A stretch of 64,000 nt of DNA. Origin: Obrimoposthia wandeli. Its lineage: Eukaryota. Of the stretch, positions 12,986-59,835 are shown one piece after another. The translations under genes were made by a program, and so were the position numbers. Within the stretch, counting starts at the first letter, position 1. The number at the start of each line of letters is the position of its first letter. The stretch spans positions 62,001 through 126,000 of the forward strand of contig CDROCS010000998.1 of NCBI GenBank assembly GCA_977020255.1. The letters run 5' to 3'. Under the pieces are notes generated by a model, which ran no database searches, was not told the DNA's origin, and worked only from the letters and a program-made list of their open reading frames with translations.

Positions 12986-13010
12986 GTGTTCAGCACGTAT
13001 AACGATTTAG

Positions 13011-14427: not shown

Positions 14428-14455
14428 GTGTCTAGTTTCACCATACTCAGAAATT

Positions 14456-14492: not shown

Positions 14493-14522
14493 CCCGTTCC
14501 GTAATCCCTGCGTTCCAAACAG

Positions 14523-14557
14523 GGTTTTGCCAAGTTCATAGGCAACTTGGCAAAACC
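14523..14557 (-). terminator. Strong hairpin downstream of ackA
   Basis: 14-bp perfect stem GGTTTTGCCAAGTT/AACTTGGCAAAACC; weak U-tract. Confidence 0.55.
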
Positions 14558-14583
14558 AACCCTTGAAAGGTTGGCATAATCTA

Positions 14584-15777: not shown

Positions 15778-16299
15778 GGTTATCTCATCAGAAAAAAAGG
15801 TAAACAGGACAAAATGCTGTCCAAACACACGTCAATCATACTTCGCAAATAAAATGTGTGGAGCAGCATTTTCTTTGCTTCATTTATATAAATATATCAT
15901 ACTCAATTTTTTTTTAAAGTCTCAACTTTTGTTTTAATTCGAGGCTAAAAATTTAAGCAAAACTGGCTTAGATCAATTTTTATCGGGTCATAGATTATTT
16001 TCCGAACAAAATACCAGCAAAGATTAAAATTTAGTTGAGTAAAAGAGGCGGAGGCTTCTGACGGCTGGAATATCACATCAACCAATCAACAATACATTAG
16101 CCGCAATGCGCCCTTATTCTAATAGCGAGAAACCGTTATCGTGAAAATATCATGTAGGGTTTTACAAGACTTGGGTATATATATTAATGGTGCCGCCACC
16201 GATCAGAGCACCGTCACGATCAAAAAAGGCCATCATTTTTGATGGCCTCAAATAACATTACACTGTATTAAACAATACTAAAACAACATGTAAAACCGC

Positions 16300-18282: not shown

Positions 18283-18620
18283 TCACTTTCCTTTATAATC
18301 GGTTTGAGAAGATTTATATACAAAAATGCCTCGCAGCAGCGAGGCGCAGGCACTATAGCCAATATTTTTTTACCGCGCAAACGCTTGCGGTTATTCCTTG
18401 TACGGAAAGAGAATATTCTTTTTATGCCTTTAAAAACTGAGATCTCACCGAGTAAATTTAAATTAAAGTGAATCAATTTTTATAAATACCTATTTCTGTT
18501 GAAAATATTACGTTTACCGCAACAAACATTCTTATAAACAAAATATAAAACAACGTGCAATTATTTGTTGAATATTGTTCTATTGATATTTATGATGACT
18601 CCATCTTTAGATAAATAACA

Positions 18621-19286
18621 ATGATGACAATGAAACGATTATTTTTAGCAGCAATCGCACTAACTAGTCTTACCGCCAATGCCACTCAATCTTACTCTTT
18701 CCTTTCTGGTGGCTATCAATTCACCCGTGTTGCTGAAAATGGCATGGGACAATATTTTGCTGACAAATACAACAATAGTGACGACAGCAAATATTTACAT
18801 GGGTTGTACTTTCGCGGCAGCTGGAATTTTTACGACCACTTTTTTGCAGAATACCGCACTGGCGCCACTACCCGCTCTTCATCAACACTTGCTCAAGACT
18901 ACCTCGCTCTGGGCTACTACATTCCCCTAGCGGCTAAAACTAGCGTGTATGCATCGATGGGCTATTCCGGCTACAGCGCGGAACGAGATATCAACGCTGG
19001 CTGTGGTCTGTTAGACAACGATAAAGAATGTAAAAAACGCTCATTCAGCCAAGATGGTAGCGGATTATCTGCAGAATTAGGATTACGCTTCAAACCATTA
19101 CGTTGGCTACAAATAGAACCGTCATACCGCTATGCCGATTTTGGTAGCAAAGGGCAACATGAACTGCGCCTAACCAACTTAATCGAATTCACACAACACT
19201 CAGCATTAGAGTTAAATGCAGGTTACCGCCATTGGGATAACCTAGATGAAACCAATTACCAAGTCGGCTATCGCTACAGCTTCTAA
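18621..19286 (+). CDS. Outer-membrane beta-barrel protein
   Basis: Signal peptide, alternating aromatic strands, C-terminal YRYSF. Confidence 0.8.
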   Translation: MMTMKRLFLAAIALTSLTANATQSYSFLSGGYQFTRVAENGMGQYFADKYNNSDDSKYLHGLYFRGSWNFYDHFFAEYRTGATTRSSSTLAQDYLALGYYIPLAAKTSVYASMGYSGYSAERDINAGCGLLDNDKECKKRSFSQDGSGLSAELGLRFKPLRWLQIEPSYRYADFGSKGQHELRLTNLIEFTQHSALELNAGYRHWDNLDETNYQVGYRYSF

Positions 19287-44402: not shown

Positions 44403-44515
44403 TTTTTATTCTTTTCTCCCTATTGTTATCTCCAACGTACACCGTATTTTAGTGGCTTAACAAGGTGACAAACACTGTCACTTTAACGCTTTTAAATTCG
44501 TTGGAGATTAACGTT

Positions 44516-45730
44516 ATGGCGGCTCAAATATCAAACCGAGATCGACTCTTTACGTTGTTTGGCACTATCATCACCCAATTTGCTTTAGGGTCGGTGTATA
44601 CGTGGAGTCTATTTAACTCACAACTGGCAGACAAGCTATCAGAGCCTGTTAGCCGCGTGGCTTTTTCTTTTGGTATTTTAAGTTTAGCGTTAGCCGTTGC
44701 ATCATCGTTGTCAGGCAAACTGCAAGAACGCTTTGGTGTACGTAAAGTTACTATTTGCTCTGGCCTATTATTGGGTGCAAGTTTATTACTGACAGCCCAT
44801 GCGTCTAACCTGATTTTACTGTATGTCTTCGCGGGTTTGTTAGTGGGCTTTGCTGACGGCACAGGTTATCTGATGACCTTATCTAACTGCGTAAAGCTAT
44901 TCCCCGAGCGTAAAGGTTTGGTCTCTGCGTGTGCCATTGGTGCTTATGGTTTAGGTAGCCTTGGGTTTAAATACATCAACATGTACTTTCTAACAAACAC
45001 TGGATTGGAAAACACTTTTAGCACCTGGGGAGTTATAGCTATGGTCATGGTTATCCTTGGCGGTCTAATGATGAAAGATGCACCCAAGCAAGAGCAGAAA
45101 AATACAACAGAAACACCTGTTCGTGATTACACTCTGGCAGAGGCTGTAAAATGCTCACAGTTTTGGATGCTAGCATTGGTCTTTCTAACCGTTTGTATGA
45201 GTGGCCTGTACGTTATTGGTGTCGCAAAAGATATCGGTGAGAGTTATGAGCATCTTCCTATGGCAATCGCTGCAACATCAGTCGCTATTATTGCCGTAGC
45301 AAACCTGAGTGGTCGTTTAGTGCTTGGCGTGCTTTCAGATAGCTTTAGCCGTATTAAAGTCATCGCTATTGCACTCTTCATCTGCTTAATCGGCGTGTGT
45401 GCGCTACTTTTTGCTCACCAAAGTACGGTTAGTTTCTATTTTGCAGTCGCATGTATTGCATTTAGTTTTGGTGGCACGATTACCGTGTTCCCATCATTGA
45501 TCAGTGATTTCTTCGGCTTAAACAACCTAACGAAAAACTACGGCTTAATTTATCTTGGCTTTGGTATCGGCAGTATCGTGGGTTCTATTGTCGCCTCGCT
45601 CTTCGGTGGATTCGTAGCAACCTTCTACCTTATGTTAGGGCTATTAGTGATCTCGTTCGTCATTGCGCTCACTATCAAGCTTCCTGATTCACAGCAAAAT
45701 AACCTTTCTGCCCAGCCAATTATGGCTTAG
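44516..45730 (+). CDS. yhjX: OFA-family MFS transporter
   Basis: RLFTLFGTIITQFALGSVYTWSLFN, FPERKGLVSAC, KNYGLIY; GGAG RBS before ATG 44516. Confidence 0.88.
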   Translation: MAAQISNRDRLFTLFGTIITQFALGSVYTWSLFNSQLADKLSEPVSRVAFSFGILSLALAVASSLSGKLQERFGVRKVTICSGLLLGASLLLTAHASNLILLYVFAGLLVGFADGTGYLMTLSNCVKLFPERKGLVSACAIGAYGLGSLGFKYINMYFLTNTGLENTFSTWGVIAMVMVILGGLMMKDAPKQEQKNTTETPVRDYTLAEAVKCSQFWMLALVFLTVCMSGLYVIGVAKDIGESYEHLPMAIAATSVAIIAVANLSGRLVLGVLSDSFSRIKVIAIALFICLIGVCALLFAHQSTVSFYFAVACIAFSFGGTITVFPSLISDFFGLNNLTKNYGLIYLGFGIGSIVGSIVASLFGGFVATFYLMLGLLVISFVIALTIKLPDSQQNNLSAQPIMA

Positions 45731-45747: not shown

Positions 45748-47770
45748 ATCGAGTAGGGTGAGGCGTTACCGCCTCATCCCTCTCACAGAACCGTACGTAC
45801 GGACCTCGTATACGGCTCCTGTAGTCTTCTATTCCCTATCTTACAGGGAGCAAGATCCCTGTTTTCACTTCGTCTATCGCATATAAGCCAACTTCCTTGA
45901 ACCATTGATTCGGCATGGCATAGTGGGATAATGGACTCGCGGCTTCTTCCACAGCTTTAATTGTAAACGCCTCAGTCTACGCCTTATCCATCCCGCCAAT
46001 TGGGTTAGCTTTCGGCTTATATTCGCTATCTTAAAGTAGTTGACGGTTCCTCTCAGAACAGGATTCAGTTCTTTAAGCACCATGGCTAAGTTCTTTCCAC
46101 TGTTTCGTCGGGTGAGCCGCTTTACTTTGGCTTTAAAGTGGTTGAACTTCTTTTCTTGTATCCGTGTAGAGTGTGTCCCTATCACAACGCCAAGAAATTT
46201 AACCCCTTCGTCACTGTGGGCGATATGAGTTTTGCGTTCATTCACTGTTAGCTTCAGTTGCTTTTCCAAGATATGACTGGCGACTTTTCTCGCATGCTCG
46301 GCGGCAGCTTGCGTGCAGCACAAGATCAGAATATCGTCAGCGTAGCGCACTATTCGGTGATTTCGCTTCTTCATGTCTTGATCAAAGGCATCGAGATAAA
46401 TATTGGCAAGCAGTGGACTGAACACGCCACCTTGTGGGCTTCCCAGCTCACTTTTCTGCCAACCGTCACCTATCATGACCCCACTTTTCAGGAATTTATC
46501 TATCAGCCTTAGAATACTGCCGTCTGTGATACGTCGTTTGACTGATTGGATGATCAGGTCATGATCGAGCATATCAAAGCATTTCGACAGATCCATATCT
46601 ACCACATGTCGACGCCCATACTGGCGTATAAACATCGTGGCTTTACTGATGGCCTGATGACAACTCCTACCCAGACGATAACCATAACTTGATGGATGAA
46701 AGTCGGGATCGAAGATGGGGGTCATGATGGTCGATAGACATTGTTGAACTATTCGGTCTCGAACTGCGGGGATCCCCAATAAACGTATGCCGCCGTCATC
46801 TTTTGGGATCTCGACGCGCTTAACGGGTTGCGGTTGATACCGCTTTTCTTGCAGTTCAAGCAGTAACTGTTTGAGGTTACTTTCCAGATCTTGCGCAAAA
46901 TCTTCCACGCACTGCCCGTCTACGCCGGGAGCGCCTTTGTTTTTCCACACTTTTCTGAATCCCTCATAGAGCGCTTGCATTGAAAGCAGGCGTCCATACA
47001 GGCTGTAATATATTCGCACGGTTACTGTCTCACATCACTGTCCATTCGCTATTTCCAAGTCAGTTCGGTTTGTTTCGTCACCGCAGTTAGGTGTTCTAGC
47101 ATTTCGCAATCTGCCCAACCCGCCTTCTTGCCTCCAATGAGTAGGAATGACTACTCCCTATGTGCAGCTCCTAGCCATCGCGCCGATTTCACTCTTTGCC
47201 ATTGGGAGGATGCCCCGCCTAATCGGCAGCTTGTGCACCTGTTTTGGTTTTTCGCTTCTTTTCAGTGTATTAAAGATTACTTCCCCCCTTCGCAACCCAC
47301 ATAGCTTTTGGCATATGTTAGCTCCAGCAAACACGTTGCTGCTGGTCGGTTCAGTTTTATCCTCCACACCATTACTGGGTTTCACTGGCTGAACTTTACT
47401 CACTACTACGGGTTCATCTGCCACCTCACACCAACATAAGCCTTGAATCACTTCTTGTGCTTATGCTTCCAGCCTTATGCTGGAGTTGATGCCAGGCTTC
47501 CTCGGTTACTGCACCAGTCCCTGTTAGAGATCCCATCCCTTTCACGTGATTGGTTTGTCTGAGTATCGGGCTTCGTGCTATTGCGGACACTTACCCACCA
47601 ATCCCGCCACATATGGGTTCACTTGCGTTATGTACCTCTAACTTCCTATGGCTTCCTTCAGACCTCATCGTTGGCCAATGACGCCCTTGCCATTCGGATT
47701 ATCTTCCCCTCAGTCTGGGTGATTCTGCTTTCTTTCAAGCAGACGGGTTTGCTGGCTTCGCCGAGCAAAC
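45748..47770 (-). mobile_element. Group II intron, class C (terminator-targeting)
   Basis: 5' end GTTTGCTCGGC right after a terminator hairpin; domain V GAGCCGTATACGAGGTCCGTACGTACGGTTC; domain VI ending CCCTACTCGAT; candidate EBS1 ACAA (47455-47458) pairs with exon end TTGT; RT ORF lacks an endonuclease domain. Confidence 0.93.
45836..47019 (-). pseudogene. ltrA: Group II intron reverse transcriptase/maturase with internal deletion and frameshift in domain X
   Basis: RT motifs KGAPGVDG, RLLGIPAVRDR, GSPQGGVFSPLLANIYL, YADD. After KLWKKP the frame shifts; the normal-looking tail AASPLSHYAMPNQWFKEVGLYAIDEVKTG...* lies in another frame ending at 45836. Confidence 0.85.
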
Positions 47771-47841: not shown

Positions 47842-48942
47842 TTAAACCTTTGGAATTTGCTGGGTAATACAGTGAATATTTCCACCACCCAATAATATTT
47901 CACGCGCATCCACACCCGTTACTTCGTAGTTTGGATATAAATCAGCTAACAGCATCGCGACGTCTTTATCGTGTTTATCATCCAGCAACGGATAAATAAT
48001 ATGATTATTGGAAATAAGGTAGTTAGCATAAGAACCCGCTAAACGCTCGCCCGGTACTCGCTCCATCCCTTCTGATACATCAACACCATTAGCTTCATCG
48101 TCTGTAATATACAGTGGCCCCGGCATCGGCAGTTTATGGACTTTGATCTGGCGTCCATTAGCATCAGTTTCGGTTAATAATACATCCATCGCTTTGCGTG
48201 AAATAAGGTACTGAGGATCCGTTTCATCATCACACCAAGTCAGTGCAATTTCTCCTGGGCGTACAATGTGAATTAAGTTATCAACGTGACCGTTGGTTTC
48301 ATCGTTATACAGGCCTTGAGGAATCCATATAACCTTCTCAATAGAGAGGGTTGCTTTCAATACATTTTCAATCTCTTCACGCGTTAAATCGGGATTACGG
48401 CTTGGGTGAAGCAAACATTCTTCGGTGGTGTATAGCGTTCCTTCGCCATCCACATGAATAGAGCCGCCTTCCAATACGATAGAGGCGCGATAACTATCGT
48501 CACCTAATGTTTCACACACTTTGCGTGCGACAGCGTCGTCTTTATCCCATGGAAAATAGAGCCCATCAACCAATCCGCCCCACGCATTAAAGTGCCAATC
48601 AACACCGCGTCGCTCACCGTGATCATTCACCACATATGAAGGGCCAATATCACGCATCCAAGAATCATCAGTACTCATTTCTAGTACCTGAATATAACTT
48701 GGCAATACTACGCGGGCATTTTCAAATTGCTCAGCACTTACCACCATAGTGACAGGCGTTGTTTTCGCAATGGCTTTGGCTACTGCCACAAACGTCGCTT
48801 GCGCGGGCTTTGCACCATAACGCCAATTATCGGTACGCTCTGGCCATGCCATCCATATAGCAGATTGAGGCTCGTGCTCTGCTGGCATTCTAAATCCATC
48901 TTGCTTTGGGCTTGTGCTTAATTGTTTAGTCATGATGTTCAC
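47842..48942 (-). CDS. aguA: Agmatine deiminase
   Basis: RMPAEHEP, WMRDIGP, EGGSIHVDGEGT, TNGHVDN, GGGNIHCITQQIP. Confidence 0.96.
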   Translation of the reverse strand: MNIMTKQLSTSPKQDGFRMPAEHEPQSAIWMAWPERTDNWRYGAKPAQATFVAVAKAIAKTTPVTMVVSAEQFENARVVLPSYIQVLEMSTDDSWMRDIGPSYVVNDHGERRGVDWHFNAWGGLVDGLYFPWDKDDAVARKVCETLGDDSYRASIVLEGGSIHVDGEGTLYTTEECLLHPSRNPDLTREEIENVLKATLSIEKVIWIPQGLYNDETNGHVDNLIHIVRPGEIALTWCDDETDPQYLISRKAMDVLLTETDANGRQIKVHKLPMPGPLYITDDEANGVDVSEGMERVPGERLAGSYANYLISNNHIIYPLLDDKHDKDVAMLLADLYPNYEVTGVDAREILLGGGNIHCITQQIPKV

Positions 48943-48966
48943 CTTTATAATTTATATATACCATCG

Positions 48967-50385
48967 CTATGCAGTATGTTCTTGGTAATCTTCTGATTTA
49001 TTGGCCTGTTTTTTCTTAGACACAGCCAACTTCAATAAATATTCACCAATCGCAATAGTCAGCAACACGCCAATTAATACGGGTGCGCTATAGGTCCAAT
49101 TAACAGAGAGCGAAATCAAATCAGGGAAAATAAACAACACAACTGCCTGTGCAATAGTCAGGAAACACACAATGCTTAATAACCACTGCACGCCCATGCC
49201 ACCAGGTACACGGAAAGGACGCTCACATTGGCTATCACTAATGCGTAGCTTCAAATAAGACGGGAACATGAATAAATAAGGTAGAAGGAAAATACAGCTT
49301 GAAAATGCAAACACTGACCAGAATAATTCATCACTGCTTTGAGCAAATATAGCATACGCAAGAATAACCGCCGTCGAAAGCGCACCAGTAATATTATTGG
49401 CACCGATAGGGGTGTTATGCTTTTTAGACATCTTACCGACGACATCAGGCAGTTCGCCTTCACTGGCGGCTTCTGCTGCTGCACGGCTTGCGCCCATTGT
49501 CCATGTCACCATATTACCAATGAAGGTCAGCAGTGCCATTGTGCCGATAATATAGACCATCATCTGACCAAAATCACCGTCACCAAACAATTTACGTAAC
49601 GTATCGATAATACCAGCCACTAGACCAATATCTTGAACGGGCAATGCCATCAAAATACCGACAGTTCCAAACACATAAAGAAAGGCGGTAATGATTGCGG
49701 CAAGGAAAATAGCCTTGGGCATATCACGCACATCTTTCATTTCTTTGGTCATGGTTGCGACAAGCTCGAAACCCATCAAATTAAACACCAAAGCGGGCAG
49801 AAAGGCGACCCCAGTATCTAGACTTGGCATCATGGCAGAAAAGCTAAATTCATTCGCAACACCATGTTTTGCGGCGTAAATAAAACCACCGAAACCCAGT
49901 ACAGAAATAACCACTATTTTTAGTATTGCGCCAATATTTGTAACCCAAACGCCCACATCGACCGATACATTACAAATCCAAATCGTTAACCATGTTAGTA
50001 CGATACAAATAACGACTTGCCAGAGTAAAGATAATCCAGGGAAAAATAATTCAGCAAACATCCCCGCAAACATAATATAAACTGCAGGCATCCATAACCC
50101 GACATTTATCCAATAAAACCAGGTTGTTCTTACCGCCCATTTATAACCAAAGGCTTTTTTAACCCAATCATAAATCCCCCCTTCACCGGGGTAGGTTGTA
50201 CTTAATTCAGACGTAATTAATCCATAAGGAATAACAAAAACAACCAGTGTTAGAATCCACCAGCCAATTGAACTCACCCCTATCGATGCTGAAGCCGTTA
50301 ATGTATCAACCACAATAACGGCGCATAAACTAAAGAGAGCTAGACTTGTAACCCCCATCTTTCCTGTCGATGCTTGCGTATCCAT
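48967..50385 (-). CDS. APC-family amino acid/polyamine permease, probable agmatine:putrescine antiporter
   Basis: 12 TM; YPGEGGIYDW, GFE motif; co-oriented directly upstream of aguA. Confidence 0.88.
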   Translation of the reverse strand: MDTQASTGKMGVTSLALFSLCAVIVVDTLTASASIGVSSIGWWILTLVVFVIPYGLITSELSTTYPGEGGIYDWVKKAFGYKWAVRTTWFYWINVGLWMPAVYIMFAGMFAELFFPGLSLLWQVVICIVLTWLTIWICNVSVDVGVWVTNIGAILKIVVISVLGFGGFIYAAKHGVANEFSFSAMMPSLDTGVAFLPALVFNLMGFELVATMTKEMKDVRDMPKAIFLAAIITAFLYVFGTVGILMALPVQDIGLVAGIIDTLRKLFGDGDFGQMMVYIIGTMALLTFIGNMVTWTMGASRAAAEAASEGELPDVVGKMSKKHNTPIGANNITGALSTAVILAYAIFAQSSDELFWSVFAFSSCIFLLPYLFMFPSYLKLRISDSQCERPFRVPGGMGVQWLLSIVCFLTIAQAVVLFIFPDLISLSVNWTYSAPVLIGVLLTIAIGEYLLKLAVSKKKQANKSEDYQEHTA

Positions 50386-50488
50386 AATCCATCTCCATGA
50401 TTATTCAAACGTATGATATTTATTTTCATCTAAGATTTTTCACTTGTTGGTTATTATCTAAACAGAGCTAGCAGCATTGTTTCGTTAT

Positions 50489-50504
50489 TAGAATCACTTA
50501 TCGA
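50489..50504. promoter_or_regulatory. Candidate TetR operator copy 1 (agu permease promoter)
   Basis: TAGAATCACTTATCGA, 14/16 identical to the reverse complement of 51694-51709. Confidence 0.45.
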
Positions 50505-50672
50505 CGAGTTCACCTTTAATGATGACAAAGGCGTGATCTGAAATTCAGATATAGCGACTCAACCCCTCTTATTCGATAAAATTGATTCTGATCAAGTGAG
50601 TAAGATGCCATTAAGGGATACTTTTGATGCCAACCAGTATTGTTAGATAAATCATTAAACAGGGAGAGTGGC

Positions 50673-50732
50673 ATGGAAAATAACAAACCTATCATTGTTG
50701 TTGCTGTAGGCGGCAATGCATTATTTCCATAA
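50673..50732 (+). pseudogene. arcC: 19-codon N-terminal relic of carbamate kinase
   Basis: GGGAG RBS; MENNKPIIVVAVGGNALFP* matches the ArcC N-terminal V(A/V)xGGNAL motif. Confidence 0.75.
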
Positions 50733-50790
50733 TATAAGAACAATAGTGGCTCAAACAATCTGGATGTATACAAAAAAATAAGAGGGCGAG

Positions 50791-51414
50791 ATGAAAAAGG
50801 AATCAACAGATCAAAGACTTAAACGGATTCATAAAGCTATCACTCATCTTGTCGCTCATCGTGACGTCAATTCAATCTCTATTTATGATGTCGCCAAAGA
50901 AGCCGCTATTGCAGCCTCTACCGTTTATCATCATTACCCTAATATTGAAGCGTTAATATACGAATTGATGGAAGATATTTTCGTTGATTTCACAAACGTC
51001 TTACAAGACTCTATCATCACTGAAAATATTTATCATTGGAGTGATATCAACCGGATGATTGAACAAGGGTTTGTCACTTACTACAGTAATAACCCACTTG
51101 TTCAGCGCATCTTACTTGGGCAACACATATACGCTTCTATCCGCCATGCCGATGCACAAAATGACCTCTTACTGGCCGAACATGTTGAAGCGATTTATCG
51201 TCAATATTTTGTATTGCCAGAGCTACCCACCAATGTAAATATTTTTGCCATCGCTTTGCAAGTTGCCGATAAAGTTTACTCAATGAACTACCGAGAAAAT
51301 GGCAGTATTCCACCAGAAATGGCACGTGAAGCGATCACGTTAACAGAAGCCTATTTAGGGACTTACCTACCTAAGAATTTGCCCAAAAAGTCAATAGAAG
51401 CAATCACACACTAA
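50791..51414 (+). CDS. TetR/AcrR family regulator (AguR-like by context)
   Basis: ISIYDVAKEAAIAASTVYHHYPN HTH; inside the agmatine locus. Confidence 0.9.
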   Translation: MKKESTDQRLKRIHKAITHLVAHRDVNSISIYDVAKEAAIAASTVYHHYPNIEALIYELMEDIFVDFTNVLQDSIITENIYHWSDINRMIEQGFVTYYSNNPLVQRILLGQHIYASIRHADAQNDLLLAEHVEAIYRQYFVLPELPTNVNIFAIALQVADKVYSMNYRENGSIPPEMAREAITLTEAYLGTYLPKNLPKKSIEAITH

Positions 51415-51503
51415 TTGATGACATTTTAGTTTTAACACCGCTTCGCCTCATTACAAACGTTTATAACTGGTCAGTTATAAGCGTTTTTTGGCTGCCTATT
51501 ATT

Positions 51504-51550
51504 TATAGCCAAGCAGCCTCTAGATGCTCGTTCCAGCGAGGATTTGTTGG
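51504..51550. repeat. ERIC-like dispersed repeat remnant (family B)
   Basis: TATAGCCAAGC...CTCGTTCCAGCGAGGATTTGTTG, similar to 63440-63475. Confidence 0.5.
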
Positions 51551-51693
51551 GTTCTAGGCAGGCGCTTATTTATAGACCTAGCGATTTAGATGGCACTATT
51601 CAAACATCAGAATCAAATATCGACTATTCGCCTCAGAACAAACAACCATTTGTGATTAATACCGTAAACATTTTCTGTTTATTTAAAAATAAA

Positions 51694-51709
51694 CCGATTA
51701 GTGATTCTA
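51694..51709. promoter_or_regulatory. Candidate TetR operator copy 2 (transcarbamylase promoter)
   Basis: CCGATTAGTGATTCTA (reverse complement TAGAATCACTAATCGG). Confidence 0.45.
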
Positions 51710-51830
51710 GTTTAAGAATTAATAATCGCAACAGCACATAATAAAAACATAAAGAATAGATAGAACATATTATTAAATATCGAATTCATTACACACTTCG
51801 ATTATAACTGTTATTTAGAAGGGAAATATT

Positions 51831-52877
51831 ATGAAAATGCCATCTTCAAGCGCTACAGATCTTAATAAAGAAGGTTTACGTCATTTCCTAAAAACTCAAG
51901 ATTATTCTAAAAAAGAGTTAAACGATATTCTTGAATTAATGGCAATGCTAAAACAAGCGCGTCATGACAATGCATTGCCCCAGCTCTTCAAAGGTAAATC
52001 TGTTGCTATGATTTTCGAGCAACCTTCGACTCGAACACGTGTCTCTTTTGAAACAGCCGCAACAATGCTTGGTGGCCATGCTTTATTCTTGTCGCCAAAA
52101 GATATTCACCTCGGTGGTAAAGAATCACTTGAAGATACAGCGCGAGTATTGTCTCGTATGGTTGATGTTATTATGGCGCGTGTTGATGATCACAGCACGG
52201 TTGCAGGCTTAGCAGAACAAGCAACTGTTCCTGTTATCAATGGATTATGTGACTGGTTACACCCAACTCAAATTATGGCTGATTTGTTTACCATGCTTGA
52301 GCATCTACCTGAAGGTAAAACCCTTCGCGATTTAACCGTTGCCTTTGTGGGTGATGCCACCAACGTTGCTTCTTCGCTGATGTTTGCATGTACTAAGTTT
52401 GGCATGACCTTCAAACATATCTGCCCTGAACGCTTTAAAGCACCACAAAAATGGATCGATATTGCTTTAGACAACTGTGAAACATCTAATGGTAAGCTCG
52501 TTATTACCGATAATACTGACGAAGTTGCTGGCTGTGACATTATTGTTGCCGATAGCTTCTACTGGTTTGGCCAGGAAGATGAAAAAGACATTCGTCTTTC
52601 GACGTTTATCCCTGATTACGTTGTGACTGAAAGCATGATGGAAAAAGCAGGACCCGATGCAATGTTCATGCACTGCTTACCAGCCAATGATCAACGCGAA
52701 TGTACTCGAGAAGTGATGGAGTCACCACGTTCTGTTATTTTTGATGAAGCAGAAAACCGCCTAACAGCCCAAATGGCACTATTAGTTTACTTCACTCACA
52801 ATCATATTAAACAACCAAGCCAAGAAACACTGGCTGAACACAAAATGAAAATTGAAAATTTCTTAAAAACATTATAA
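51831..52877 (+). CDS. Putrescine-transcarbamylase-like carbamoyltransferase
   Basis: STRTR, HPTQ and HCLP transcarbamylase motifs; LPEGKTL, FVGDAT and an extra C-terminal helix as in PtcA/AguB; no SMG motif; next to aguA. Confidence 0.75.
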   Translation: MKMPSSSATDLNKEGLRHFLKTQDYSKKELNDILELMAMLKQARHDNALPQLFKGKSVAMIFEQPSTRTRVSFETAATMLGGHALFLSPKDIHLGGKESLEDTARVLSRMVDVIMARVDDHSTVAGLAEQATVPVINGLCDWLHPTQIMADLFTMLEHLPEGKTLRDLTVAFVGDATNVASSLMFACTKFGMTFKHICPERFKAPQKWIDIALDNCETSNGKLVITDNTDEVAGCDIIVADSFYWFGQEDEKDIRLSTFIPDYVVTESMMEKAGPDAMFMHCLPANDQRECTREVMESPRSVIFDEAENRLTAQMALLVYFTHNHIKQPSQETLAEHKMKIENFLKTL

Positions 52878-52897
52878 ATAATACCTACAAAATGAGT

Positions 52898-52944
52898 AAA
52901 AAAAAGAGCATGCAATCATTATGATTACATGCTCTTTTTAGGGT
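52898..52944. repeat. Terminator-like palindrome family C, left copy
   Basis: AAAAAAAAGAGCATGCAATCATTATGATTACATGCTCTTTTTAGGGT. Confidence 0.85.
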
Positions 52945-52954
52945 TTAATTCAAC

Positions 52955-54208
52955 TTATTGGTGGCGTTCTGCCGTAACCTTGATCACTTCTATCACCACA
53001 TCACTTGCGGCTTGCAAAGATTTCACCGGAAGGTATTCATAAATCGAATGAAAATTATGTGCGCCTGTAAAAATATTCGGACACGGTAAGCCTTTTTGCG
53101 ATAATACTGCACCATCGTAACCGCCACGCATCGGGATCGCTTTCATCACAATGCCATTTCGTGCATAAGCTTCTTTGGCGATATCTATCGGGAAGCTCGC
53201 TTCGCCTTCTAAACTGTTTGCCACATTTTCGTAACGATCATCCAATTGAATTGAAATTGCAGACTCGCCCCACAGCTTTCCACAGCTGTCTGACAAGCTT
53301 TGTAAAAAGCACATACGATCGCGATAACCTTGCTGAGAAAAGTCACGGATGTCCATCTTCAGTATCGTTTTCGCACTATTACCCGCCATTTCTTTCACCC
53401 AATAATACCCTTCACGTCCATCGGTATATTGTGGCGCTTCGCCAGCAGGTAGCATGCTAATAAATTGGTGTGCCATTAATAACGAATTCTTGAGCTTTCC
53501 TTTGGCAGACATAGGGTGAGCAGATTGCCCAGTAAACGTCACGACTGCATTACCCGCATTCCAGTTTTCATGCACAAATTCACCAATGCCGCAGCAATCT
53601 AGGGTATAGCCAAAGTCAGCGCCAAAGCTCTCAACATCAAACGCTTTTGCACCGCGTAACCCTTGTTCTTCATCCGGCACAAATGCCACTTTGACCGTGC
53701 CGTGCGGAATCTCTGGATTGGCCTTTAACACCTGTAATGCATGCATGATGGCGGCAATAGCGGCTTTGTCATCGGCACCTAATAAGCTCGTACCATCGGT
53801 GACTAAAATGTCATCACCAACGTAATCGCCAAGCTCTGGAAACTCGCTCTCTTTAAGCACTATATCCAATGCCGAATTCAAGCAAATATCTCCCCCTTGG
53901 TAGTGAACAATTTGCGCGCGAGTATCATTCGTTTGCTCGGCACTGGTATCTAAATGAGCAAAAAATGATACCGTCGGAATCGTTTTCTCTCCCTGAACTG
54001 AAGGAATATTTGCAGGTAAAGTGGCTGTAAGAATTGCGGTATCACGCAATACAATATCTTCCATACCTAATGCATCGAGTTCTTTCGCCAACAGCTGCGC
54101 CAATTCCATCTGACCATCAGAAGAAGGCATGATACCAGCAGCACCTTTCTCACGGCTCGTTGTCGTATTAATGCGGGTGTAATGTAAGAAACGATCAACA
54201 ATGTTCAT
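52955..54208 (-). CDS. pepT: Peptidase T (M20B tripeptide aminopeptidase)-like
   Basis: FAHLDTS, LLGADDKAAIA, PDEEQG, RGGYDG, HNFHSIYEY; GGAG RBS before ATG 54208. Confidence 0.92.
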   Translation of the reverse strand: MNIVDRFLHYTRINTTTSREKGAAGIMPSSDGQMELAQLLAKELDALGMEDIVLRDTAILTATLPANIPSVQGEKTIPTVSFFAHLDTSAEQTNDTRAQIVHYQGGDICLNSALDIVLKESEFPELGDYVGDDILVTDGTSLLGADDKAAIAAIMHALQVLKANPEIPHGTVKVAFVPDEEQGLRGAKAFDVESFGADFGYTLDCCGIGEFVHENWNAGNAVVTFTGQSAHPMSAKGKLKNSLLMAHQFISMLPAGEAPQYTDGREGYYWVKEMAGNSAKTILKMDIRDFSQQGYRDRMCFLQSLSDSCGKLWGESAISIQLDDRYENVANSLEGEASFPIDIAKEAYARNGIVMKAIPMRGGYDGAVLSQKGLPCPNIFTGAHNFHSIYEYLPVKSLQAASDVVIEVIKVTAERHQ

Positions 54209-54346
54209 GTATAACTCCAACGCTTTGCATGATTTTGAGAACAGCCTTAATGAATAATGAGGCTGTTCTCAGTAAACGGTCGCACGATGCTTCAACATGC
54301 TTTTTGTGCGACCTGATGACATATCGTTATTTTCAATTTGACGTGG

Positions 54347-55708
54347 TTAGACCAAAATTTGAGAGCAAATCAGTACAGTCAATAAGCCACCAAGCATCGG
54401 AATCGCGGTACGCTTTGCCAACTCGATTGGCGAAATATTAGCCACACCTGCACACGCAATGACAACACCAGCGACTGGTGACGCTGAACGCATTAAACCT
54501 GCTGCTAATTGCATTGGTAATGCAACGTGCGCGGCCGCTGTACCCACTTGTGCAGCCACATCAGGTGCCAAGTTAGAAAAGCTAAAGAACGAAGCATTGC
54601 CTGAACCTGACAGCATCGTCACCATCACAATAATCAGTACTAATACCACCACCATAGCCAAATAACCTAACCCCATACTAGATGCCGAGCTAAGTAATAA
54701 ATCAATAAAGCCAATCGTCGTTAAGCCAGTTACGAATACCTGAGCAGAAATGATTAAACTCACGACACCAGTAAATACGTTACCCATTCCCTCTAAGTAC
54801 ACTTTTAGTGACGCTGCCACTTGCTTACCATCACGTGTGTAAATGTAGTCACATACCATAGACACAAACAAAGCAATGAACATCGCCGTTACCACATCCA
54901 TACGAACTGAAGTGACGGCAAACTTACTGAATGTTAGTAGTAACATCAACGGCAATACAGGCAAAATTGCAAACCACTTAGGCGCATCACGTTGTTCTTT
55001 TGCATCAATATTAAATACGTGAGTTACACCCTTTTCTGCATCTTTCTGATCAAAGTAACGCTGACATACAAAGTGTAGCGCTGCGATCACCACCATAGCG
55101 ACTATCGCAACGGGAAATTGATAGCTCGCAAAATACGTTGCAACATCAATGCCCGATACTTCTGCTGCTTTGTTCGCGGCTGAAGAGGCAGGCCCTAAAT
55201 CCAAACAGCCCGTTGTCGCAACCACTGCCGCCGCAGCCGCTGGGTTACAGCCAACCCCCACAAGTACTGGATACATCGCCACCAATAACAACAGCGCTAA
55301 ACCTGTCGCACTCGGGATGAAAATATTGATCAACTGACCAATAATGTACGCCAGTGCTAACACTAGGTACGGGTTTTTAATGTGAGAAAGTGGCTTAGTC
55401 GCAATCTGGACCATCGCATTCGCAGCACCAATATGCCCCATATATTTCGAAAAGCCACCCACAGCCATAATGATTAAACCTAACTTCGCCAATGTTGATG
55501 ACGAAATAACTTTAATCACTTCAAAAAAGTCGACGATGATAGCGCCGGTTGGGGTTCCCCCTTTAGGAAGAAAATCTGTCGTACCGTTTAGTACACCAAG
55601 CGCGATCATTAATAAACCAGCAAGGAATAATACTGCTTGGGTATTATATTTTTTAACAATAAAATACCCGACACCGAATATCGTCGGCAACGCTAATAAA
55701 GTAATCAT
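54347..55708 (-). CDS. dcuC: DcuC/DcuD-family transporter
   Basis: LGLIIMAVGGFSKYMGHIGA, IFIPSATGL, GSGNASFFSF, GLMRSASPVAGVVIA. Confidence 0.85.
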   Translation of the reverse strand: MITLLALPTIFGVGYFIVKKYNTQAVLFLAGLLMIALGVLNGTTDFLPKGGTPTGAIIVDFFEVIKVISSSTLAKLGLIIMAVGGFSKYMGHIGAANAMVQIATKPLSHIKNPYLVLALAYIIGQLINIFIPSATGLALLLLVAMYPVLVGVGCNPAAAAAVVATTGCLDLGPASSAANKAAEVSGIDVATYFASYQFPVAIVAMVVIAALHFVCQRYFDQKDAEKGVTHVFNIDAKEQRDAPKWFAILPVLPLMLLLTFSKFAVTSVRMDVVTAMFIALFVSMVCDYIYTRDGKQVAASLKVYLEGMGNVFTGVVSLIISAQVFVTGLTTIGFIDLLLSSASSMGLGYLAMVVVLVLIIVMVTMLSGSGNASFFSFSNLAPDVAAQVGTAAAHVALPMQLAAGLMRSASPVAGVVIACAGVANISPIELAKRTAIPMLGGLLTVLICSQILV

Positions 55709-55879
55709 TCAAGACCTCATTATCTTACAGTCATAGTAGGGTTGCTCATCTGAAATAAATGAGCATAAATCAAAACACGTTTATATTTATAGAAACTACA
55801 GGTGTACAAAGTTGCACTCCCATTCATTAATGAATGACAGTTATATATCAATTATTTACCTTAGCGATAATCTAATTAA

Positions 55880-56725
55880 CTAGAAGACCCTGAACTCATC
55901 AAATAAACTTTCAATACGTTTAAAGCGATTGTTTTTTTCTTTCTGTTTTGAAAGACCTTTAATAAAAGCTTCTATCAACACAAAGCCAGAAGCTCGATTA
56001 TTAAAGAAACCTTCACTACCACTTTCAACCGCAAACTGAATATCACAATACGCCACAAACGGATTTACAGGCTGATCGGTAACAAAAATAATGCGGCCAC
56101 CGAACTGATGAAACCACTTCACTAAACGGACAGTAATCGTCGAAAAACGGTGGTAAGAAATTGCAAATAAAGTATCGTCTTCTGTCACATCCACCAGTTG
56201 ATGTGGCAATGTCGATATATCTGCTTTCAACCACACCACATCTTTGCGTAAGTACCTAGCCAGCAAAAAGAAATAGTTGGCTAAGGCTTCTGATGAGGCA
56301 CTACCTATTACATATAACTTTCCTTTCGGGTTCTGCATATACCCAATCGCGCGTTCGAAATCTTCCTCCGAGATTGATGCAAAGGTTTTTGTCATATTCG
56401 ACATCACTTCATCATAGTGCTTCGTCAATATACTTTGTTCATTATCAGCATGTTGCGTAACTTCATAACGTTCAGCGGGTGTCGTCAACGTTTGAGCTAA
56501 ATCATCGGCAACATGTTTTTTGAATTCCAAAAACCCACTGAAACCTAAATGCTGTAAAAAGCGCCCTAATGTCGCTTTACCAACCCCAATCTGCTTACAT
56601 AACTCATCAATTTTAGCAAACGGCAGCATGGTATAATGCTTCATAAAATACTGAGTAATACGTTCTTCTGCTACGGTCAGCGACCCTAATCCATTTACCG
56701 TATTGATGAAGTCTTTCTTATCCAT
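55880..56725 (-). CDS. MurR/RpiR family regulator (HTH + SIS)
   Basis: LTVAEERITQY, ATLGRFLQHLGFSGFLEFK; SIS domain. Confidence 0.9.
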   Translation of the reverse strand: MDKKDFINTVNGLGSLTVAEERITQYFMKHYTMLPFAKIDELCKQIGVGKATLGRFLQHLGFSGFLEFKKHVADDLAQTLTTPAERYEVTQHADNEQSILTKHYDEVMSNMTKTFASISEEDFERAIGYMQNPKGKLYVIGSASSEALANYFFLLARYLRKDVVWLKADISTLPHQLVDVTEDDTLFAISYHRFSTITVRLVKWFHQFGGRIIFVTDQPVNPFVAYCDIQFAVESGSEGFFNNRASGFVLIEAFIKGLSKQKEKNNRFKRIESLFDEFRVF

Positions 56726-57030
56726 GGGGCTTATTTCCCAAATCTTTATTCTGTGGGATATATTTCCACTTACCCTATGATACTTACAAGGGAATTAGAT
56801 TTTCCCACGCTAAATTTGTGACTAACACACACAATAAGTATGGAATTAGCAATTCGTTGATTTAAATAAAATAAATAGAAACAAAGCTGATGTGATTTAC
56901 TTACATAAAACAAACATAAAAACACAACCACACCTAATAATATAATTATATATAAGTGATGATAATCATATATAAAACTAATGATAATAGTCACATCACT
57001 ACGTATAATAAATAAGCCGCTTTATTATTC

Positions 57031-57075
57031 AAAAAAAAGAGCATGTAATCATTCGATTTCATGCCCTTTTAGGGT
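57031..57075. repeat. Terminator-like palindrome family C, right copy
   Basis: AAAAAAAAGAGCATGTAATCATTCGATTTCATGCCCTTTTAGGGT, same orientation as 52898. Confidence 0.85.
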
Positions 57076-57125
57076 ACGTCACTTTAAAAAGATCCACATT
57101 ATCGTATTCAATTTCTTCTTTTTAA

Positions 57126-57770
57126 TTACCAATGCTCAACATCAACAATTTCAGCACTGATAAAGTAAATCGAATGTTTCGGCACAGAGAAAGTAATAGG
57201 ATTACCTTTCTGCTGTGTTTTCGCTCTGAAATACGTATCAGGAAGGCGTTTTATTGATGACCAAATTTTTGCCTCCTCACTACCGATTTGATTCCCTTTT
57301 TCATCACTTAAGGTAACCTTTACAATCACTGTAACAACCGATTGCAGACTCTGATTTGTCATCATTGTAGGAATAACAAGCACACCATTGTCATACTCGG
57401 CTGCTGTAAGTAAAACATCAACGCCACTATTACTCAGTTGTTGAATGTTTTTACTCGCACCCAACTCTACGCGCGCGCCTTTAGGTGCCCGAGTAAGAGG
57501 AATCGCACTCACCACAGGAATAGCTGCAGCACTCTTCGTAATACTAGAGGCTGTTGGTACGATTGGTACTGCGCTTGTTGTTTCGATTGGCGTCGATTTC
57601 ACTTCTACAGGTAAAACGGTCGTCTTTATTGCTGGGTATTCCCATGTGAAGTCATCATGTAATACAACTTGTCGACCATCTTCTAACATCACCACTTTAT
57701 CTGCTGCCCAAGCACTATTTGTTGCTGTTAGGGCTATCAATACCCCACACAACTGGCTTATTCTTTTCAT
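57126..57770 (-). CDS. Secreted DUF3157-like protein
   Basis: Signal peptide; LEDGRQVVLHDDFTWEY motif. Confidence 0.75.
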   Translation of the reverse strand: MKRISQLCGVLIALTATNSAWAADKVVMLEDGRQVVLHDDFTWEYPAIKTTVLPVEVKSTPIETTSAVPIVPTASSITKSAAAIPVVSAIPLTRAPKGARVELGASKNIQQLSNSGVDVLLTAAEYDNGVLVIPTMMTNQSLQSVVTVIVKVTLSDEKGNQIGSEEAKIWSSIKRLPDTYFRAKTQQKGNPITFSVPKHSIYFISAEIVDVEHW

Positions 57771-58060
57771 TTTATATCCCTTACCAAAGCTTTCTTTCTT
57801 ATTATAAGAATAGTAACAGGTTTACTGTCCAAATAATGTTGTATACATCCACCATAAATATAGTTACAACCTTATAGATAGTTCTGTTTTATCTGTCTGA
57901 ATGTTTCATATTACGAGTAACTTGCGGTATATCGACGTTAATAACGTAAACATTCAAATTAGGTATGGTAAAAAATGGTGATGACCCAGCGATTTTATTA
58001 GAGTGGTCAGCACCACCCTAATGATCAATGAAGCCTCAAGAACGATACCGTTACGATGCA

Positions 58061-58833: not shown

Positions 58834-59835
58834 ATGTCTTTTAATCTTCGCAACCGTAACTTTCTAAAATTACTTGATTTCACAGGCAAAGAAATCGAAC
58901 ACCTCATAGCATTGGCGCAAGACTTAAAACATGCCAAGTATGCTGGCACTGAACAACAGAAGCTGAAGGGTAAAAATATCGCTCTCATCTTTGAAAAAAC
59001 GTCCACTCGTACCCGTTGTGCATTTGAAGTAGCAGCCCATGATCAAGGTGCACATGTCACTTACATTGGCGGCGGATCGCAAATGGGTCATAAAGAAAGT
59101 ACTAAAGATACTGCCCGTGTTTTAGGTCGCTTCTATGATGGCATTGAATATCGTGGTTTTGGGCAAGATGTCGTTGAGATTTTAGGAGAACATGCTGGCG
59201 TGCCGGTTTGGAATGGTTTAACCGATGAATGGCATCCAACTCAAATCATCGCAGATTGGATGACAATGCTAGAACACGGTAACGGTAAACGCCTAAATCA
59301 AATGAAACTTGCCTATATGGGCGATGCCAAAAATAATATGGGTAACTCACTAATGGTTGGCGCGGCAAAAGTGGGAATGGAAATCCGTCTTGTTGGCCCT
59401 AAAGCCTACTGGCCAGATCCGGCTCTTGTTGCTGAATGCAATGAGTTGTGCGAAATTTCAGGCGGTAAAATTGTCATTACCGATGATGTGCAAGAAGGCG
59501 TTAGCGACGTAGACTTTATTTACGGTGATGTATGGGTTTCTATGGGTGAACCTGAAGAACTGTGGGAAACACGCATAAACGACCTAACACCCTACCAAGT
59601 GAATATGTCGGTTATCACAGCAACGCAGAACCCAGCGGTTAAATACATGCACTGCTTACCTGCATTTCATAATAACGAAACACGAGTGGGTAAAAAGATA
59701 GAAGAAAAATTCAATATGAAAGGTCTTGAAGTGACAGAAGACGTTTTTGAATCTTCTTACACTATTTGTTTCGATGAAGCAGAAAATAGAATGCACTCAA
59801 TTAAAGCAATCATGATTGCGACCTTAGGCGATTAA
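58834..59835 (+). CDS. argF: Ornithine carbamoyltransferase (ArgF/ArcB)
   Basis: STRTR, HPTQ, DVWVSMG, HCLP; GIEYRG suggests the catabolic-type variant. Confidence 0.93.

What the first reader, a model, noticed from the sequence alone, without database searches (positions are those of the whole stretch)
47842..52877. Agmatine-deiminase locus with an atypical putrescine-transcarbamylase-like enzyme and a destroyed carbamate kinase
Seen: antiporter-aguA divergent from [arcC relic]-tetR-transcarbamylase; the enzyme has PTC-like hallmarks but its substrate loop reads DSFYWFG, against DVWVSMG in the OTC at 58834. Known: the phosphorolytic AguA/PtcA/AguC/AguD pathway is characteristic of fermentative Gram-positives (E. 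faecalis PTC loop DVWYGLY, from recall), while Pseudomonas uses a hydrolase AguB with a TetR-type AguR. Inference: a hybrid locus (Gram-positive chemistry, TetR control) whose transcarbamylase may have altered diamine specificity (e.g. cadaverine or another polyamine). With the local ATP-yielding step lost, carbamoyl phosphate would be routed elsewhere (another ArcC, the nearby OTC, or pyrimidine synthesis), or the locus serves acid resistance or polyamine supply.
Basis: partly seen in the sequence, partly recalled or inferred. Interest (0 to 1): 0.7.

Follow-up and report, generated by a model that had tools for sequence, protein, structure and literature searches.

The report
Photobacterium agmatine locus missing its kinase
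This is the usual agmatine-to-putrescine energy gene cluster of a deep-sea Photobacterium, in a natural variant that lost its own carbamate kinase through an 888-base deletion. Its odd-looking transcarbamylase loop is the norm for a large, never-assayed branch of putrescine transcarbamylases.

Summary
The window is a Photobacterium contig of the P. profundum/frigidiphilum/indicum group inside a 1.35 Gb mixed assembly. It carries aguA and an APC antiporter on the minus strand. Facing them are a 19-codon arcC stub, tetR and a 348-aa putrescine carbamoyltransferase (PTC).

The stub comes from an 888-bp deletion. P. indicum ATCC 19614 and one P. profundum-group strain have the identical junction. 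Other close strains keep an intact 304-aa arcC at that spot.

The four remaining genes are under strong purifying selection (dN/dS 0.03-0.08). Contigs of the same species in the assembly hold intact arcC paralogues, including an arcA-arcC-arcB operon.

The DSFYWFG loop is not peculiar to this gene. It is invariant in a large clade that sits next to aguA in 40 of 44 genomes examined. The protein passes TIGR04384 and meets the published PTC signature except for Phe at one loop position. Its model matches E. faecalis PTC (TM 0.90-0.94), including the C-terminal helix.

The clade does replace the E. faecalis putrescine "roof" residues. No member appears to have been assayed, so altered specificity is unlikely but not excluded.

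Verdict: an ordinary locus, with a strain-level deletion and a modestly interesting uncharacterised PTC subfamily.

The parts
47842..48942 (-). aguA, agmatine deiminase (366 aa)
   Evidence: TIGR03380 equivalog at 603 bits (cut-off 381.8) and Pfam PAD_porph. dN/dS is 0.04-0.05 against relatives.
48967..50385 (-). APC-superfamily permease (472 aa), the likely agmatine/putrescine antiporter (AguD-like)
   Evidence: Pfam AA_permease_2. It matches NCBIfam antiporter models (GadC, TyrP, AdiC) only below their cut-offs. It lies next to aguA in nearly all related loci. The function is inferred from synteny.
50490..50504 (+). Conserved 15-nt candidate operator (AGAATCANWTATCGA) in the divergent promoter region
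   Evidence: Three of the four matches in the 64-kb window fall in the two intergenic regions of this locus. The motif is conserved at syntenic positions in Photobacterium, Psychromonas, Izhakiella, Erwinia and Ferrimonas. The protein that binds it is inferred, not shown.
50673..50732 (+). arcC relic: 19 codons plus TAA; deletion junction at about 50729-50733
   Evidence: It aligns to the first codons of the 304-aa arcC of P. profundum 3TCK and P. frigidiphilum. 888 bp are missing, with the same GCAA/TAA/TATAAGA-type junction in L017 and L026. The missing piece is nowhere else in the assembly.
50791..51414 (+). TetR-family regulator (207 aa)
   Evidence: Pfam TetR_N. It reaches no specific NCBIfam model, and PDB matches cover the HTH only. 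It sits upstream of the PTC gene in Photobacterium, Psychromonas, Izhakiella, Erwinia and Ferrimonas loci. dN/dS is 0.05-0.08.
51455..51486 (+). Hairpin followed by a T-run after tetR (terminator-like)
   Evidence: Inverted repeat I6: 15-nt arms, 93% complementary, 2-nt loop, followed by a T-run. Its function is inferred.
51609..51708 (.). Pair of candidate operator sites, 51609-51623(+) and 51694-51708(-), starts 85 bp apart, upstream of the PTC gene
   Evidence: The same pair, with the same spacing, is conserved across Photobacterium species.
51831..52877 (+). Putrescine carbamoyltransferase, clade B (348 aa)
   Evidence: TIGR04384 at 520.1 bits (cut-off 500). 98-99% identical to the P. profundum and P. 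frigidiphilum proteins that NCBI names PTC. Best PDB sequence match is E. faecalis PTC at E 1e-93. The AF2 model has pLDDT 92.8, and its top 20 Foldseek hits are all E. faecalis PTC at TM 0.85-0.94. The C-terminal helix spans residues 331-347.

Best explanation
The locus is the normal agmatine deiminase (AgDI) cluster of the Photobacterium profundum group.

How it most likely works. The APC permease imports agmatine, probably in exchange for putrescine. AguA converts agmatine to N-carbamoylputrescine and ammonia. The transcarbamylase then splits N-carbamoylputrescine with phosphate into putrescine and carbamoyl phosphate. A TetR-family regulator probably controls both divergent promoters through a conserved 15-nt site.

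The deletion. In this strain an old 888-bp deletion removed codons 20-304 of the cluster's own carbamate kinase. The allele also occurs in P. indicum ATCC 19614 and in one other strain. The pathway is still in use. Carbamoyl phosphate is most likely turned into ATP by a paralogous carbamate kinase, above all the ArcC of the arcA-arcC-arcB operon, or drawn into arginine and pyrimidine synthesis.

The loop. The DSFYWFG loop marks a large sister subfamily of the classical Enterococcus-type PTC. That subfamily builds its putrescine pocket from a different, strictly conserved residue set.

Shown: gene identities, the deletion and its distribution, purifying selection, paralogous arcC genes, clade structure, the link to aguA, and the fold. 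Inferred: substrate, transport mode, who binds the operator, and the fate of carbamoyl phosphate.
For: Family scans identify each gene: aguA 603 bits, PTC 520 bits against a cut-off of 500.

Orthologous loci in P. profundum 3TCK, ATCC BAA-1252 and P. frigidiphilum carry an intact arcC between the antiporter gene and tetR. The window, L017 and L026 share one junction.

dN/dS is 0.03-0.08 for all four remaining genes, including comparisons against other deletion carriers at dS 0.23-0.43.

G000 contigs C122 (97.6% nt identity to P. frigidiphilum; arcA-arcC-arcB) and C1028 (95%; hydantoinase plus arcC) carry intact carbamate kinases above the TIGR00746 cut-off. The three related species have 3-5 arcC-family genes each.

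Of 44 loci with clade-B PTCs from different genomes, 40 have aguA within 10 kb. Twelve lack a linked arcC, so an unlinked kinase is common.

In the tree, the DSFYW clades B and C form one group (100/99 support), separate from the classical DVWYGLY clade (100/100).

The protein meets the Polo 2012 signature. It has STRT and HCLP. Gln, not Lys, lies two residues before STRT. The loop reads Y-W-F-G against the signature (Y/W)(G/W)(V/L/I)X. The C-terminal extension carries IENFL. That paper lists a P. profundum and a Vibrio protein among putative PTCs.

The AF2 model matches E. faecalis PTC.

The operator-like motif is enriched in the locus and phylogenetically conserved.
Against: No member of the DSFYW clades has a published assay in the library searched.

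The E. faecalis residues that shape the putrescine site are all different here: Q79 to H, H83 to K, Q164 to N, G231 to W, L232 to F, Y233 to G, and the loop is one residue shorter. Loop position 232 is Phe, outside the published V/L/I set.

That C122 and C1028 belong to the same cell as the window contig rests on sequence identity to P. frigidiphilum, and on there being a single copy of this locus in a multi-organism assembly. It does not rest on physical linkage.

Confidence: 0.8

Rival explanations
1. The DSFYW-type enzyme has a different or broader amine specificity than classical PTC (for example cadaverine, diaminopropane, or a carbamoylated relative). The cluster would then process something other than, or in addition to, agmatine and N-carbamoylputrescine.
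For: Eight positions of the second-substrate site differ from E. faecalis PTC and are invariant within the clade. In E. faecalis, changing YGLY to VSMG reverses the preference (Polo 2012). Shi et al. [quoted passage not shown]
Against: The gene is tightly and widely linked to an equivalog-level agmatine deiminase, in 40 of 44 loci. It passes the curated PTC model. D227, Q50 and the C-terminal helix are kept. Y233, E236 and H83 are already known not to be conserved among PTCs. W at position 231 is part of the published signature.
Confidence: 0.07
2. After losing arcC the cluster no longer serves energy conservation. It works mainly for putrescine supply and/or alkalinisation through ammonia release, with carbamoyl phosphate salvaged into arginine (the OTC at 58834) and pyrimidine synthesis.
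For: There is no local kinase. An OTC gene lies 6 kb away. Twelve of 44 related clusters lack a linked arcC. The remaining genes stay under selection.
Against: Intact ArcC paralogues are available in the same species, and carbamate kinases accept carbamoyl phosphate whatever its source (established enzymology). This reading does not exclude the best explanation.
Confidence: 0.12
3. The locus is decaying. The arcC deletion is the first step of pseudogenisation, and the other genes are no longer used.
For: One gene of the cluster is destroyed. A group II intron has inserted next to aguA in this strain only. The neighbourhood is mosaic between strains.
Against: All four remaining ORFs are full length. 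dN/dS is 0.03-0.08 over dS 0.2-0.4, even between deletion carriers. The promoter-region motif is intact. The intron lies in intergenic DNA.
Confidence: 0.03

Closest known systems
Enterococcus faecalis agmatine deiminase system (aguR-aguB/ptcA-aguD-aguA-aguC) and its PTC (PDB 4A8H, 4A8P, 3TXX)
   Same: The same enzyme set: AguA, PTC, an APC-type antiporter, and carbamate kinase in the intact alleles. The PTC has the same fold (TM 0.90-0.94), with STRT, HPTQ and HCLP motifs, Gln before STRT, D227, and the PTC-specific C-terminal helix with its (L/I)xxFL motif.
   Different: About 46-55% identity, and a separate clade in the tree. The pocket and roof residues differ: H, K, N, W, F, G against Q79, H83, Q164, G231, L232, Y233, and the loop is one residue shorter. 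The genes are divergently arranged with a TetR-family regulator, where the E. faecalis system has an AguR activator (PMC3796520; its LuxR-family type is from my own knowledge). The local kinase is deleted in this strain.
Orthologous clusters of P. profundum 3TCK / ATCC BAA-1252 and P. frigidiphilum JCM 12947
   Same: Same gene order and 91-97% nucleotide identity. The PTC is 98-99% identical, and the operator-like sites are the same.
   Different: They keep the 304-aa arcC. The window also carries a group II intron downstream of aguA and lacks the PNP_UDP_1 gene after the PTC gene.
Pseudomonas aeruginosa aguBA with TetR-type AguR (from my own knowledge; Nakada et al. 2001)
   Same: Agmatine deiminase plus a TetR-family regulator in a gammaproteobacterium.
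   Different: Pseudomonas uses the hydrolase AguB (N-carbamoylputrescine amidohydrolase), which yields no carbamoyl phosphate. Here the step is phosphorolytic. Orthology of the two TetR proteins was not tested.
Clade C 'DSFYW[V/T]TQ / AGSTRTR' transcarbamylases of Vibrio and others, mostly annotated as OTC
   Same: Sister clade (100/99 support), with the same DSFYW core and the same H79, K83 and W231. It is also linked to aguA, an antiporter and arcC, for example on G000 contig C5137.
   Different: Ala replaces Gln before STRT and Asp replaces Asn at position 164. These proteins score below the TIGR04384 cut-off (434-493 bits), so many are named ornithine carbamoyltransferase.

Membership tests
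Putrescine carbamoyltransferase (EC 2.1.3.6; TIGR04384; signature of Polo et al. 2012) | Invariant STRT and HCLP motifs | tested here: met
   S66-T-R-T and H281-C-L-P are present and invariant in alignment A2.
Putrescine carbamoyltransferase (EC 2.1.3.6; TIGR04384; signature of Polo et al. 2012) | No Lys two residues upstream of STRT (Gln in PTC) | tested here: met
   Q64 in FEQPSTRT. The OTC at 58834 has K there, in KTSTRTR.
Putrescine carbamoyltransferase (EC 2.1.3.6; TIGR04384; signature of Polo et al. 2012) | 230-loop (Y/W)(G/W)(V/L/I)X in place of the XSMG of OTC | tested here: inconclusive
   The loop reads Y-W-F-G. The first two positions fit, and SMG is absent. The third is Phe, a conservative change outside the listed V/L/I set.
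Putrescine carbamoyltransferase (EC 2.1.3.6; TIGR04384; signature of Polo et al. 2012) | C-terminal extension of about 20 residues forming helix 13, with (L/f/v/i)XX(F/Y/L/M/v)(L/i/m) | tested here: met
   The protein is 348 aa, against 333 aa for the OTC at 58834. It carries IENFL near the C-terminus. AF2 predicts a helix at 331-347, after the helix at 303-322, and full-length E. faecalis PTC chains align over 336-339 columns.
Putrescine carbamoyltransferase (EC 2.1.3.6; TIGR04384; signature of Polo et al. 2012) | Score above the curated NCBIfam cut-off | tested here: met
   520.1 bits against a cut-off of 500. The margin is narrow.
Putrescine carbamoyltransferase (EC 2.1.3.6; TIGR04384; signature of Polo et al. 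2012) | E. faecalis pocket and roof residues Q79*, H83*, Q164, Y233, E236 | tested here: not met
   The window has H, K, N and G at the first four, and the loop around 236 is one residue shorter. Shi et al. [quoted passage not shown]
Putrescine carbamoyltransferase (EC 2.1.3.6; TIGR04384; signature of Polo et al. 2012) | Catalyses N-carbamoylputrescine + Pi <-> putrescine + carbamoyl phosphate, with preference over ornithine | not testable with these tools
   Needs an enzyme assay. No assay of any clade B or C member was found.
Ornithine carbamoyltransferase | DxxxSMG loop and Lys in FxKxSxRT | tested here: not met
   The loop is DSFYWFG and the residue before STRT is Q64. The window's own OTC at 58834 has both features.
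Agmatine deiminase system (AguA, PTC, antiporter, carbamate kinase) | Agmatine deiminase encoded in the cluster | tested here: met
   TIGR03380 equivalog at 603 bits.
Agmatine deiminase system (AguA, PTC, antiporter, carbamate kinase) | Agmatine/putrescine antiporter | tested here: inconclusive
   An APC-family permease is always adjacent to aguA. It scores only below the cut-offs of related antiporter models, and no AguD-specific model was hit.
Agmatine deiminase system (AguA, PTC, antiporter, carbamate kinase) | Cluster-encoded carbamate kinase | tested here: not met
   Only 19 codons remain at 50673-50732. The gene is intact in orthologous loci, and paralogues lie elsewhere in the same species.

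The most novel reading that the evidence does not exclude
The DSFYW transcarbamylases (clades B and C) may be an unassayed second solution to diamine recognition. The family is very large: all 8000 candidates scored in one search were significant, though that count includes OTCs and classical PTCs. These enzymes hold H79, K83, N/D164, W231 and G/T233 where E. faecalis PTC holds Q79, H83, Q164, G231 and Y233. Their amine range or kinetics might differ from E. faecalis PTC, for instance by accepting longer or shorter diamines. The repeated occurrence of clusters without a linked kinase might mark a use of carbamoyl phosphate other than ATP synthesis.
Probability: 0.08. Interest if true: 0.55.

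Novelty: new member of a known kind. Interest (0 to 1): 0.25.

Why it matters
For genome annotation, it shows that the DSFYW loop is a dependable mark of an agmatine-linked PTC subfamily. Its Vibrio-type half falls under the curated cut-off and is widely mislabelled as OTC.

For enzymology, it gives comparative support, though not proof, on a question left open by Shi et al. 2015: whether PTC-like sequences with variant loops are real PTCs. It also identifies the residue set that a structure or mutagenesis study should target.

For physiology, the natural pairs with and without arcC (P. profundum 3TCK against P. indicum ATCC 19614 or this strain) offer a ready test of whether a pathway-specific carbamate kinase matters when paralogues exist.

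None of this is surprising to a specialist.

Tried and rejected
Assembly artefact as the cause of the arcC stub: rejected, because the same junction occurs in two independent public assemblies.

Relocation of arcC: rejected. The deleted 888 bp match nothing in G000 above 73% identity.

A second, complete agu cluster in the same organism: contig C5137 has one, with a clade C PTC and its own arcC. But the contig is only 65-78% identical to P. profundum-group genomes, so it belongs to another Vibrionaceae in the assembly.

Independent recurrence of the same deletion in other arcC-less Photobacterium clusters (L032-L034): no stub was found there, so that is a different state.

Closer identification of the TetR: PDB and NCBIfam gave only generic HTH matches. 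Orthology to Pseudomonas AguR was not tested.

The large representative protein search was not used, because the family scans had already placed the protein. The model's coordinates could not be inspected, so the idea that W231 takes over the 'tile' role of Y233 remains untested. A words search of earlier scan notes found nothing.

Full report
**What is there.**
The ORF list and the Pfam and NCBIfam scans give this layout:

| Coordinates | Strand | Feature | Evidence |
|---|---|---|---|
| 44465-45730 | + | MFS transporter | |
| 45874-47019 | - | group II intron reverse transcriptase | |
| 47842-48942 | - | aguA | TIGR03380 equivalog, 603 bits, cut-off 382 |
| 48967-50385 | - | APC-family permease | Pfam AA_permease_2 |
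| 50386-50790 | | 405-nt gap | |
| 50791-51414 | + | tetR | Pfam TetR_N |
| 51415-51830 | | 416-nt gap | |
| 51831-52877 | + | 348-aa transcarbamylase | TIGR04384 putrescine carbamoyltransferase, 520.1 bits, cut-off 500 |
| 52955-54220 | - | pepT | |
| 54347-55708 | - | dcuC | |
| 58834-59835 | + | ordinary OTC | KTSTRTR and DVWVSMG motifs |

Inside the first gap, 50673-50732(+) is a 19-codon ORF. It reads like the N-terminus of a carbamate kinase (…IIVVAVGGNAL…) and then stops.

**Whose DNA it is.**
The window is part of contig C998 of a 1.35 Gb, 6912-contig assembly that holds many bacterial contigs. The transcarbamylase is 98-99% identical to proteins that NCBI names putrescine carbamoyltransferase in Photobacterium profundum, P. 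frigidiphilum and P. indicum. The locus DNA is 91-97% identical to those species and closest to P. frigidiphilum.

**The carbamate kinase.**
- In P. profundum 3TCK, ATCC BAA-1252, two further strains and P. frigidiphilum, a 304-aa arcC lies exactly between the antiporter gene and tetR. It scores 378 bits against TIGR00746, over the cut-off.
- The window lacks 888 bp relative to them, the equivalent of L025:1123-2010. Eighteen or nineteen codons remain, followed by a three-base TAA at the junction and then the normal downstream flank.
- The same junction, TAA included, is present in P. indicum ATCC 19614 (L026) and in strain GCA_050337985.1 (L017). This points to one old event that now segregates in the species group. 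It is neither an assembly error nor a private mutation.
- The missing segment is nowhere else in the assembly, and the assembly holds only one copy of this locus.

**Is the rest still used?**
All four remaining ORFs are full length. Nei-Gojobori dN/dS against relatives is 0.03-0.08. That includes the other two deletion carriers, at dS 0.23-0.43. The locus is under strong purifying selection, which argues against decay.

**Is there another ArcC?**
Family searches of the assembly found several intact carbamate kinases.
- One is on contig C122, in an arcA-arcC-arcB operon. That contig is 97.6% identical in DNA to P. frigidiphilum.
- Another is on C1028, next to a dihydropyrimidinase-like gene, at 95% identity to P. 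frigidiphilum.
- The three reference species carry 3-5 arcC-family genes each. P. indicum, a deletion carrier, has three.
- A second complete agu cluster on C5137 belongs to a different Vibrionaceae, at 65-78% identity.

Paralogue rescue of the ATP-yielding step is therefore plausible. That these contigs share one cell with C998 is inferred from identity, not from linkage.

**The enzyme.**
- The best solved relative is E. faecalis PTC (E 1e-93), and the match runs through the PTC-specific C-terminal helix.
- Polo et al. 2012 (PMC3282769) define PTCs by four traits: the STRT and HCLP motifs; the absence of Lys two residues before STRT; a 230-loop reading (Y/W)(G/W)(V/L/I)X in place of XSMG; and a C-terminal extension of about 20 residues carrying (L/f/v/i)XX(F/Y/L/M/v)(L/i/m).
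- The window protein has STRT and HCLP, Q64 before STRT, a Y-W-F-G loop, and IENFL in a C-terminal extension. It meets every trait except that Phe stands where V/L/I is listed.
- That paper already lists a P. profundum and a Vibrio sinaloensis protein among putative PTCs.
- An AlphaFold model built on a 48-sequence alignment (pLDDT 92.8) predicts the extra helix at residues 331-347. Its 20 best PDB matches are all E. faecalis PTC chains, at TM 0.85-0.94.

**How typical the loop is.**
All 120 best database relatives carry DSFYW. They split into two clades:
- Clade B has QPSTRTR and ADSFYWFGQ. It includes the window, Photobacterium, Psychromonas, Ferrimonas, Endozoicomonas, Kistimonas, Erwinia, Pseudovibrio, Romboutsia, Haloplasma and a mollicute.
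- Clade C has AGSTRTR and GDSFYW[V/T]TQ. It includes many Vibrio proteins and is mostly annotated as OTC.

A maximum-likelihood tree adds classical PTCs drawn from 301 genomes of the class that holds Haloplasma, plus OTC outgroups. It joins B and C at 100/99 support and keeps them apart from the classical DVWYGLY clade (100/100). The order of these clades relative to anabolic OTCs is unresolved.

The table uses E. faecalis numbering. Each residue shown for B and C is invariant in 64 of 64 members, except position 232.

| Position | Classical | Clade B (window) | Clade C |
|---|---|---|---|
| 50 | Q | Q | A |
| 79 | Q | H | H |
| 83 | H | K | K |
| 164 | Q | N | D |
| 229 | W | F | F |
| 231 | G | W | W |
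| 232 | L | F | V/T |
| 233 | Y | G | T |

The clade thus has its own fixed pocket, in which the Y233 'tile' and the Q79-H83-E236 roof of the E. faecalis enzyme are replaced. Shi et al. [quoted passage not shown] **Context as a test of function.**
Of 44 clade-B loci from different genomes, 40 have aguA within 10 kb. One of the other four is cut by a contig end. Nearly all 40 also have the APC permease, and 32 of the 44 have arcC. The clade C gene on C5137 likewise sits with arcC, an APC permease and aguA. This conserved linkage, across Gammaproteobacteria, an alphaproteobacterium, Clostridia and Bacilli-class genomes including a mollicute, is the strongest available evidence that the physiological substrate is N-carbamoylputrescine. 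Twelve of the 44 loci lack a linked arcC, so a cluster without its own kinase is common. No experimental work on a Vibrionaceae AgDI system or a DSFYW enzyme was found in the library.

**Regulation.**
- The order tetR then PTC, opposite antiporter-aguA, is shared by Photobacterium, Psychromonas, Izhakiella, Erwinia and Ferrimonas. The 'hybrid' design is therefore a lineage norm.
- A 15-nt motif, AGAATCANWTATCGA, occurs at 50490(+), 51609(+) and 51694(-). These are three of only four matches in the 64 kb, where chance predicts about 1.05.
- The motif recurs at the same relative places in those genera. It is absent from loci without this tetR.
- It is a good candidate operator, but who binds it is inferred.
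- A hairpin with a T-run at 51455-51486 probably terminates tetR, so the PTC gene likely has its own promoter.

**Verdict.**
This is an ordinary AgDI cluster of a Photobacterium, in a known-type arrangement and with a standard member of a widespread PTC subfamily. The one strain-level peculiarity is an old, shared deletion of the cluster's carbamate kinase, which paralogues or anabolic use of carbamoyl phosphate most likely compensate for. It survives only because nobody appears to have assayed this subfamily.

**Limits.**
No host or human-like contig was handled.

Noticed in passing
window 45748-47767 (-): A full-length group II intron is inserted in the intergenic DNA about 75 bp downstream of the aguA stop. 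Rfam finds domains D1-D4 at 47513-47681 and D5-D6 at 45748-45820, and the RT/maturase ORF lies at 45874-47019. The insertion is absent from all compared Photobacterium relatives.
   Followed up: partly
G000 contig C5137 (L110, L112), about 9600-18750: A second agmatine cluster from another Vibrionaceae in the same assembly: tetR, APC, arcC, a clade C PTC (62% identical to the window's, 434 bits, below the TIGR04384 cut-off), then APC and aguA. This clade is widely named 'ornithine carbamoyltransferase' in databases, yet it is aguA-linked and carries the DSFYW loop.
   Followed up: partly
window 50490-50504, 51609-51623, 51694-51708: A conserved 15-nt motif, AGAATCANWTATCGA, lies in both regulatory regions of the locus. 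The same positions and the 85-bp spacing are kept across five genera. It is a candidate TetR operator.
   Followed up: partly
L030/L033 (P. lipolyticum) and L031/L034 (P. sagamiensis): These species carry two clade-B PTC genes each. One is paired only with arcC. The other sits in an aguA-APC-tetR-PTC cluster with no arcC and no arcC stub.
   Followed up: no
L097, L101 (Actinomycetota MAGs); L127, L128 (genome G262): Further divergent PTC-like transcarbamylases of 335-344 aa, with C-terminal extensions and other aromatic loops (VGWWW[L/M]Q, DVWTYYGYE, DLWWWIDQE). They fall outside the three main clades. Their substrates are unknown.
   Followed up: no
window 52878-58000 against L017, L018, L026: The neighbourhood downstream of the PTC gene is mosaic. 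The window keeps pepT, dcuC and an RpiR-type gene, like 3TCK, but lacks the PNP_UDP_1 gene. The other deletion carriers lack the whole block.
   Followed up: no
G000 as a whole: The 'genome' is a 1.35 Gb, 6912-contig assembly with several large bacterial contigs, including at least two different Vibrionaceae. Gene counts for the whole genome cannot be read as counts for one organism.
   Followed up: partly
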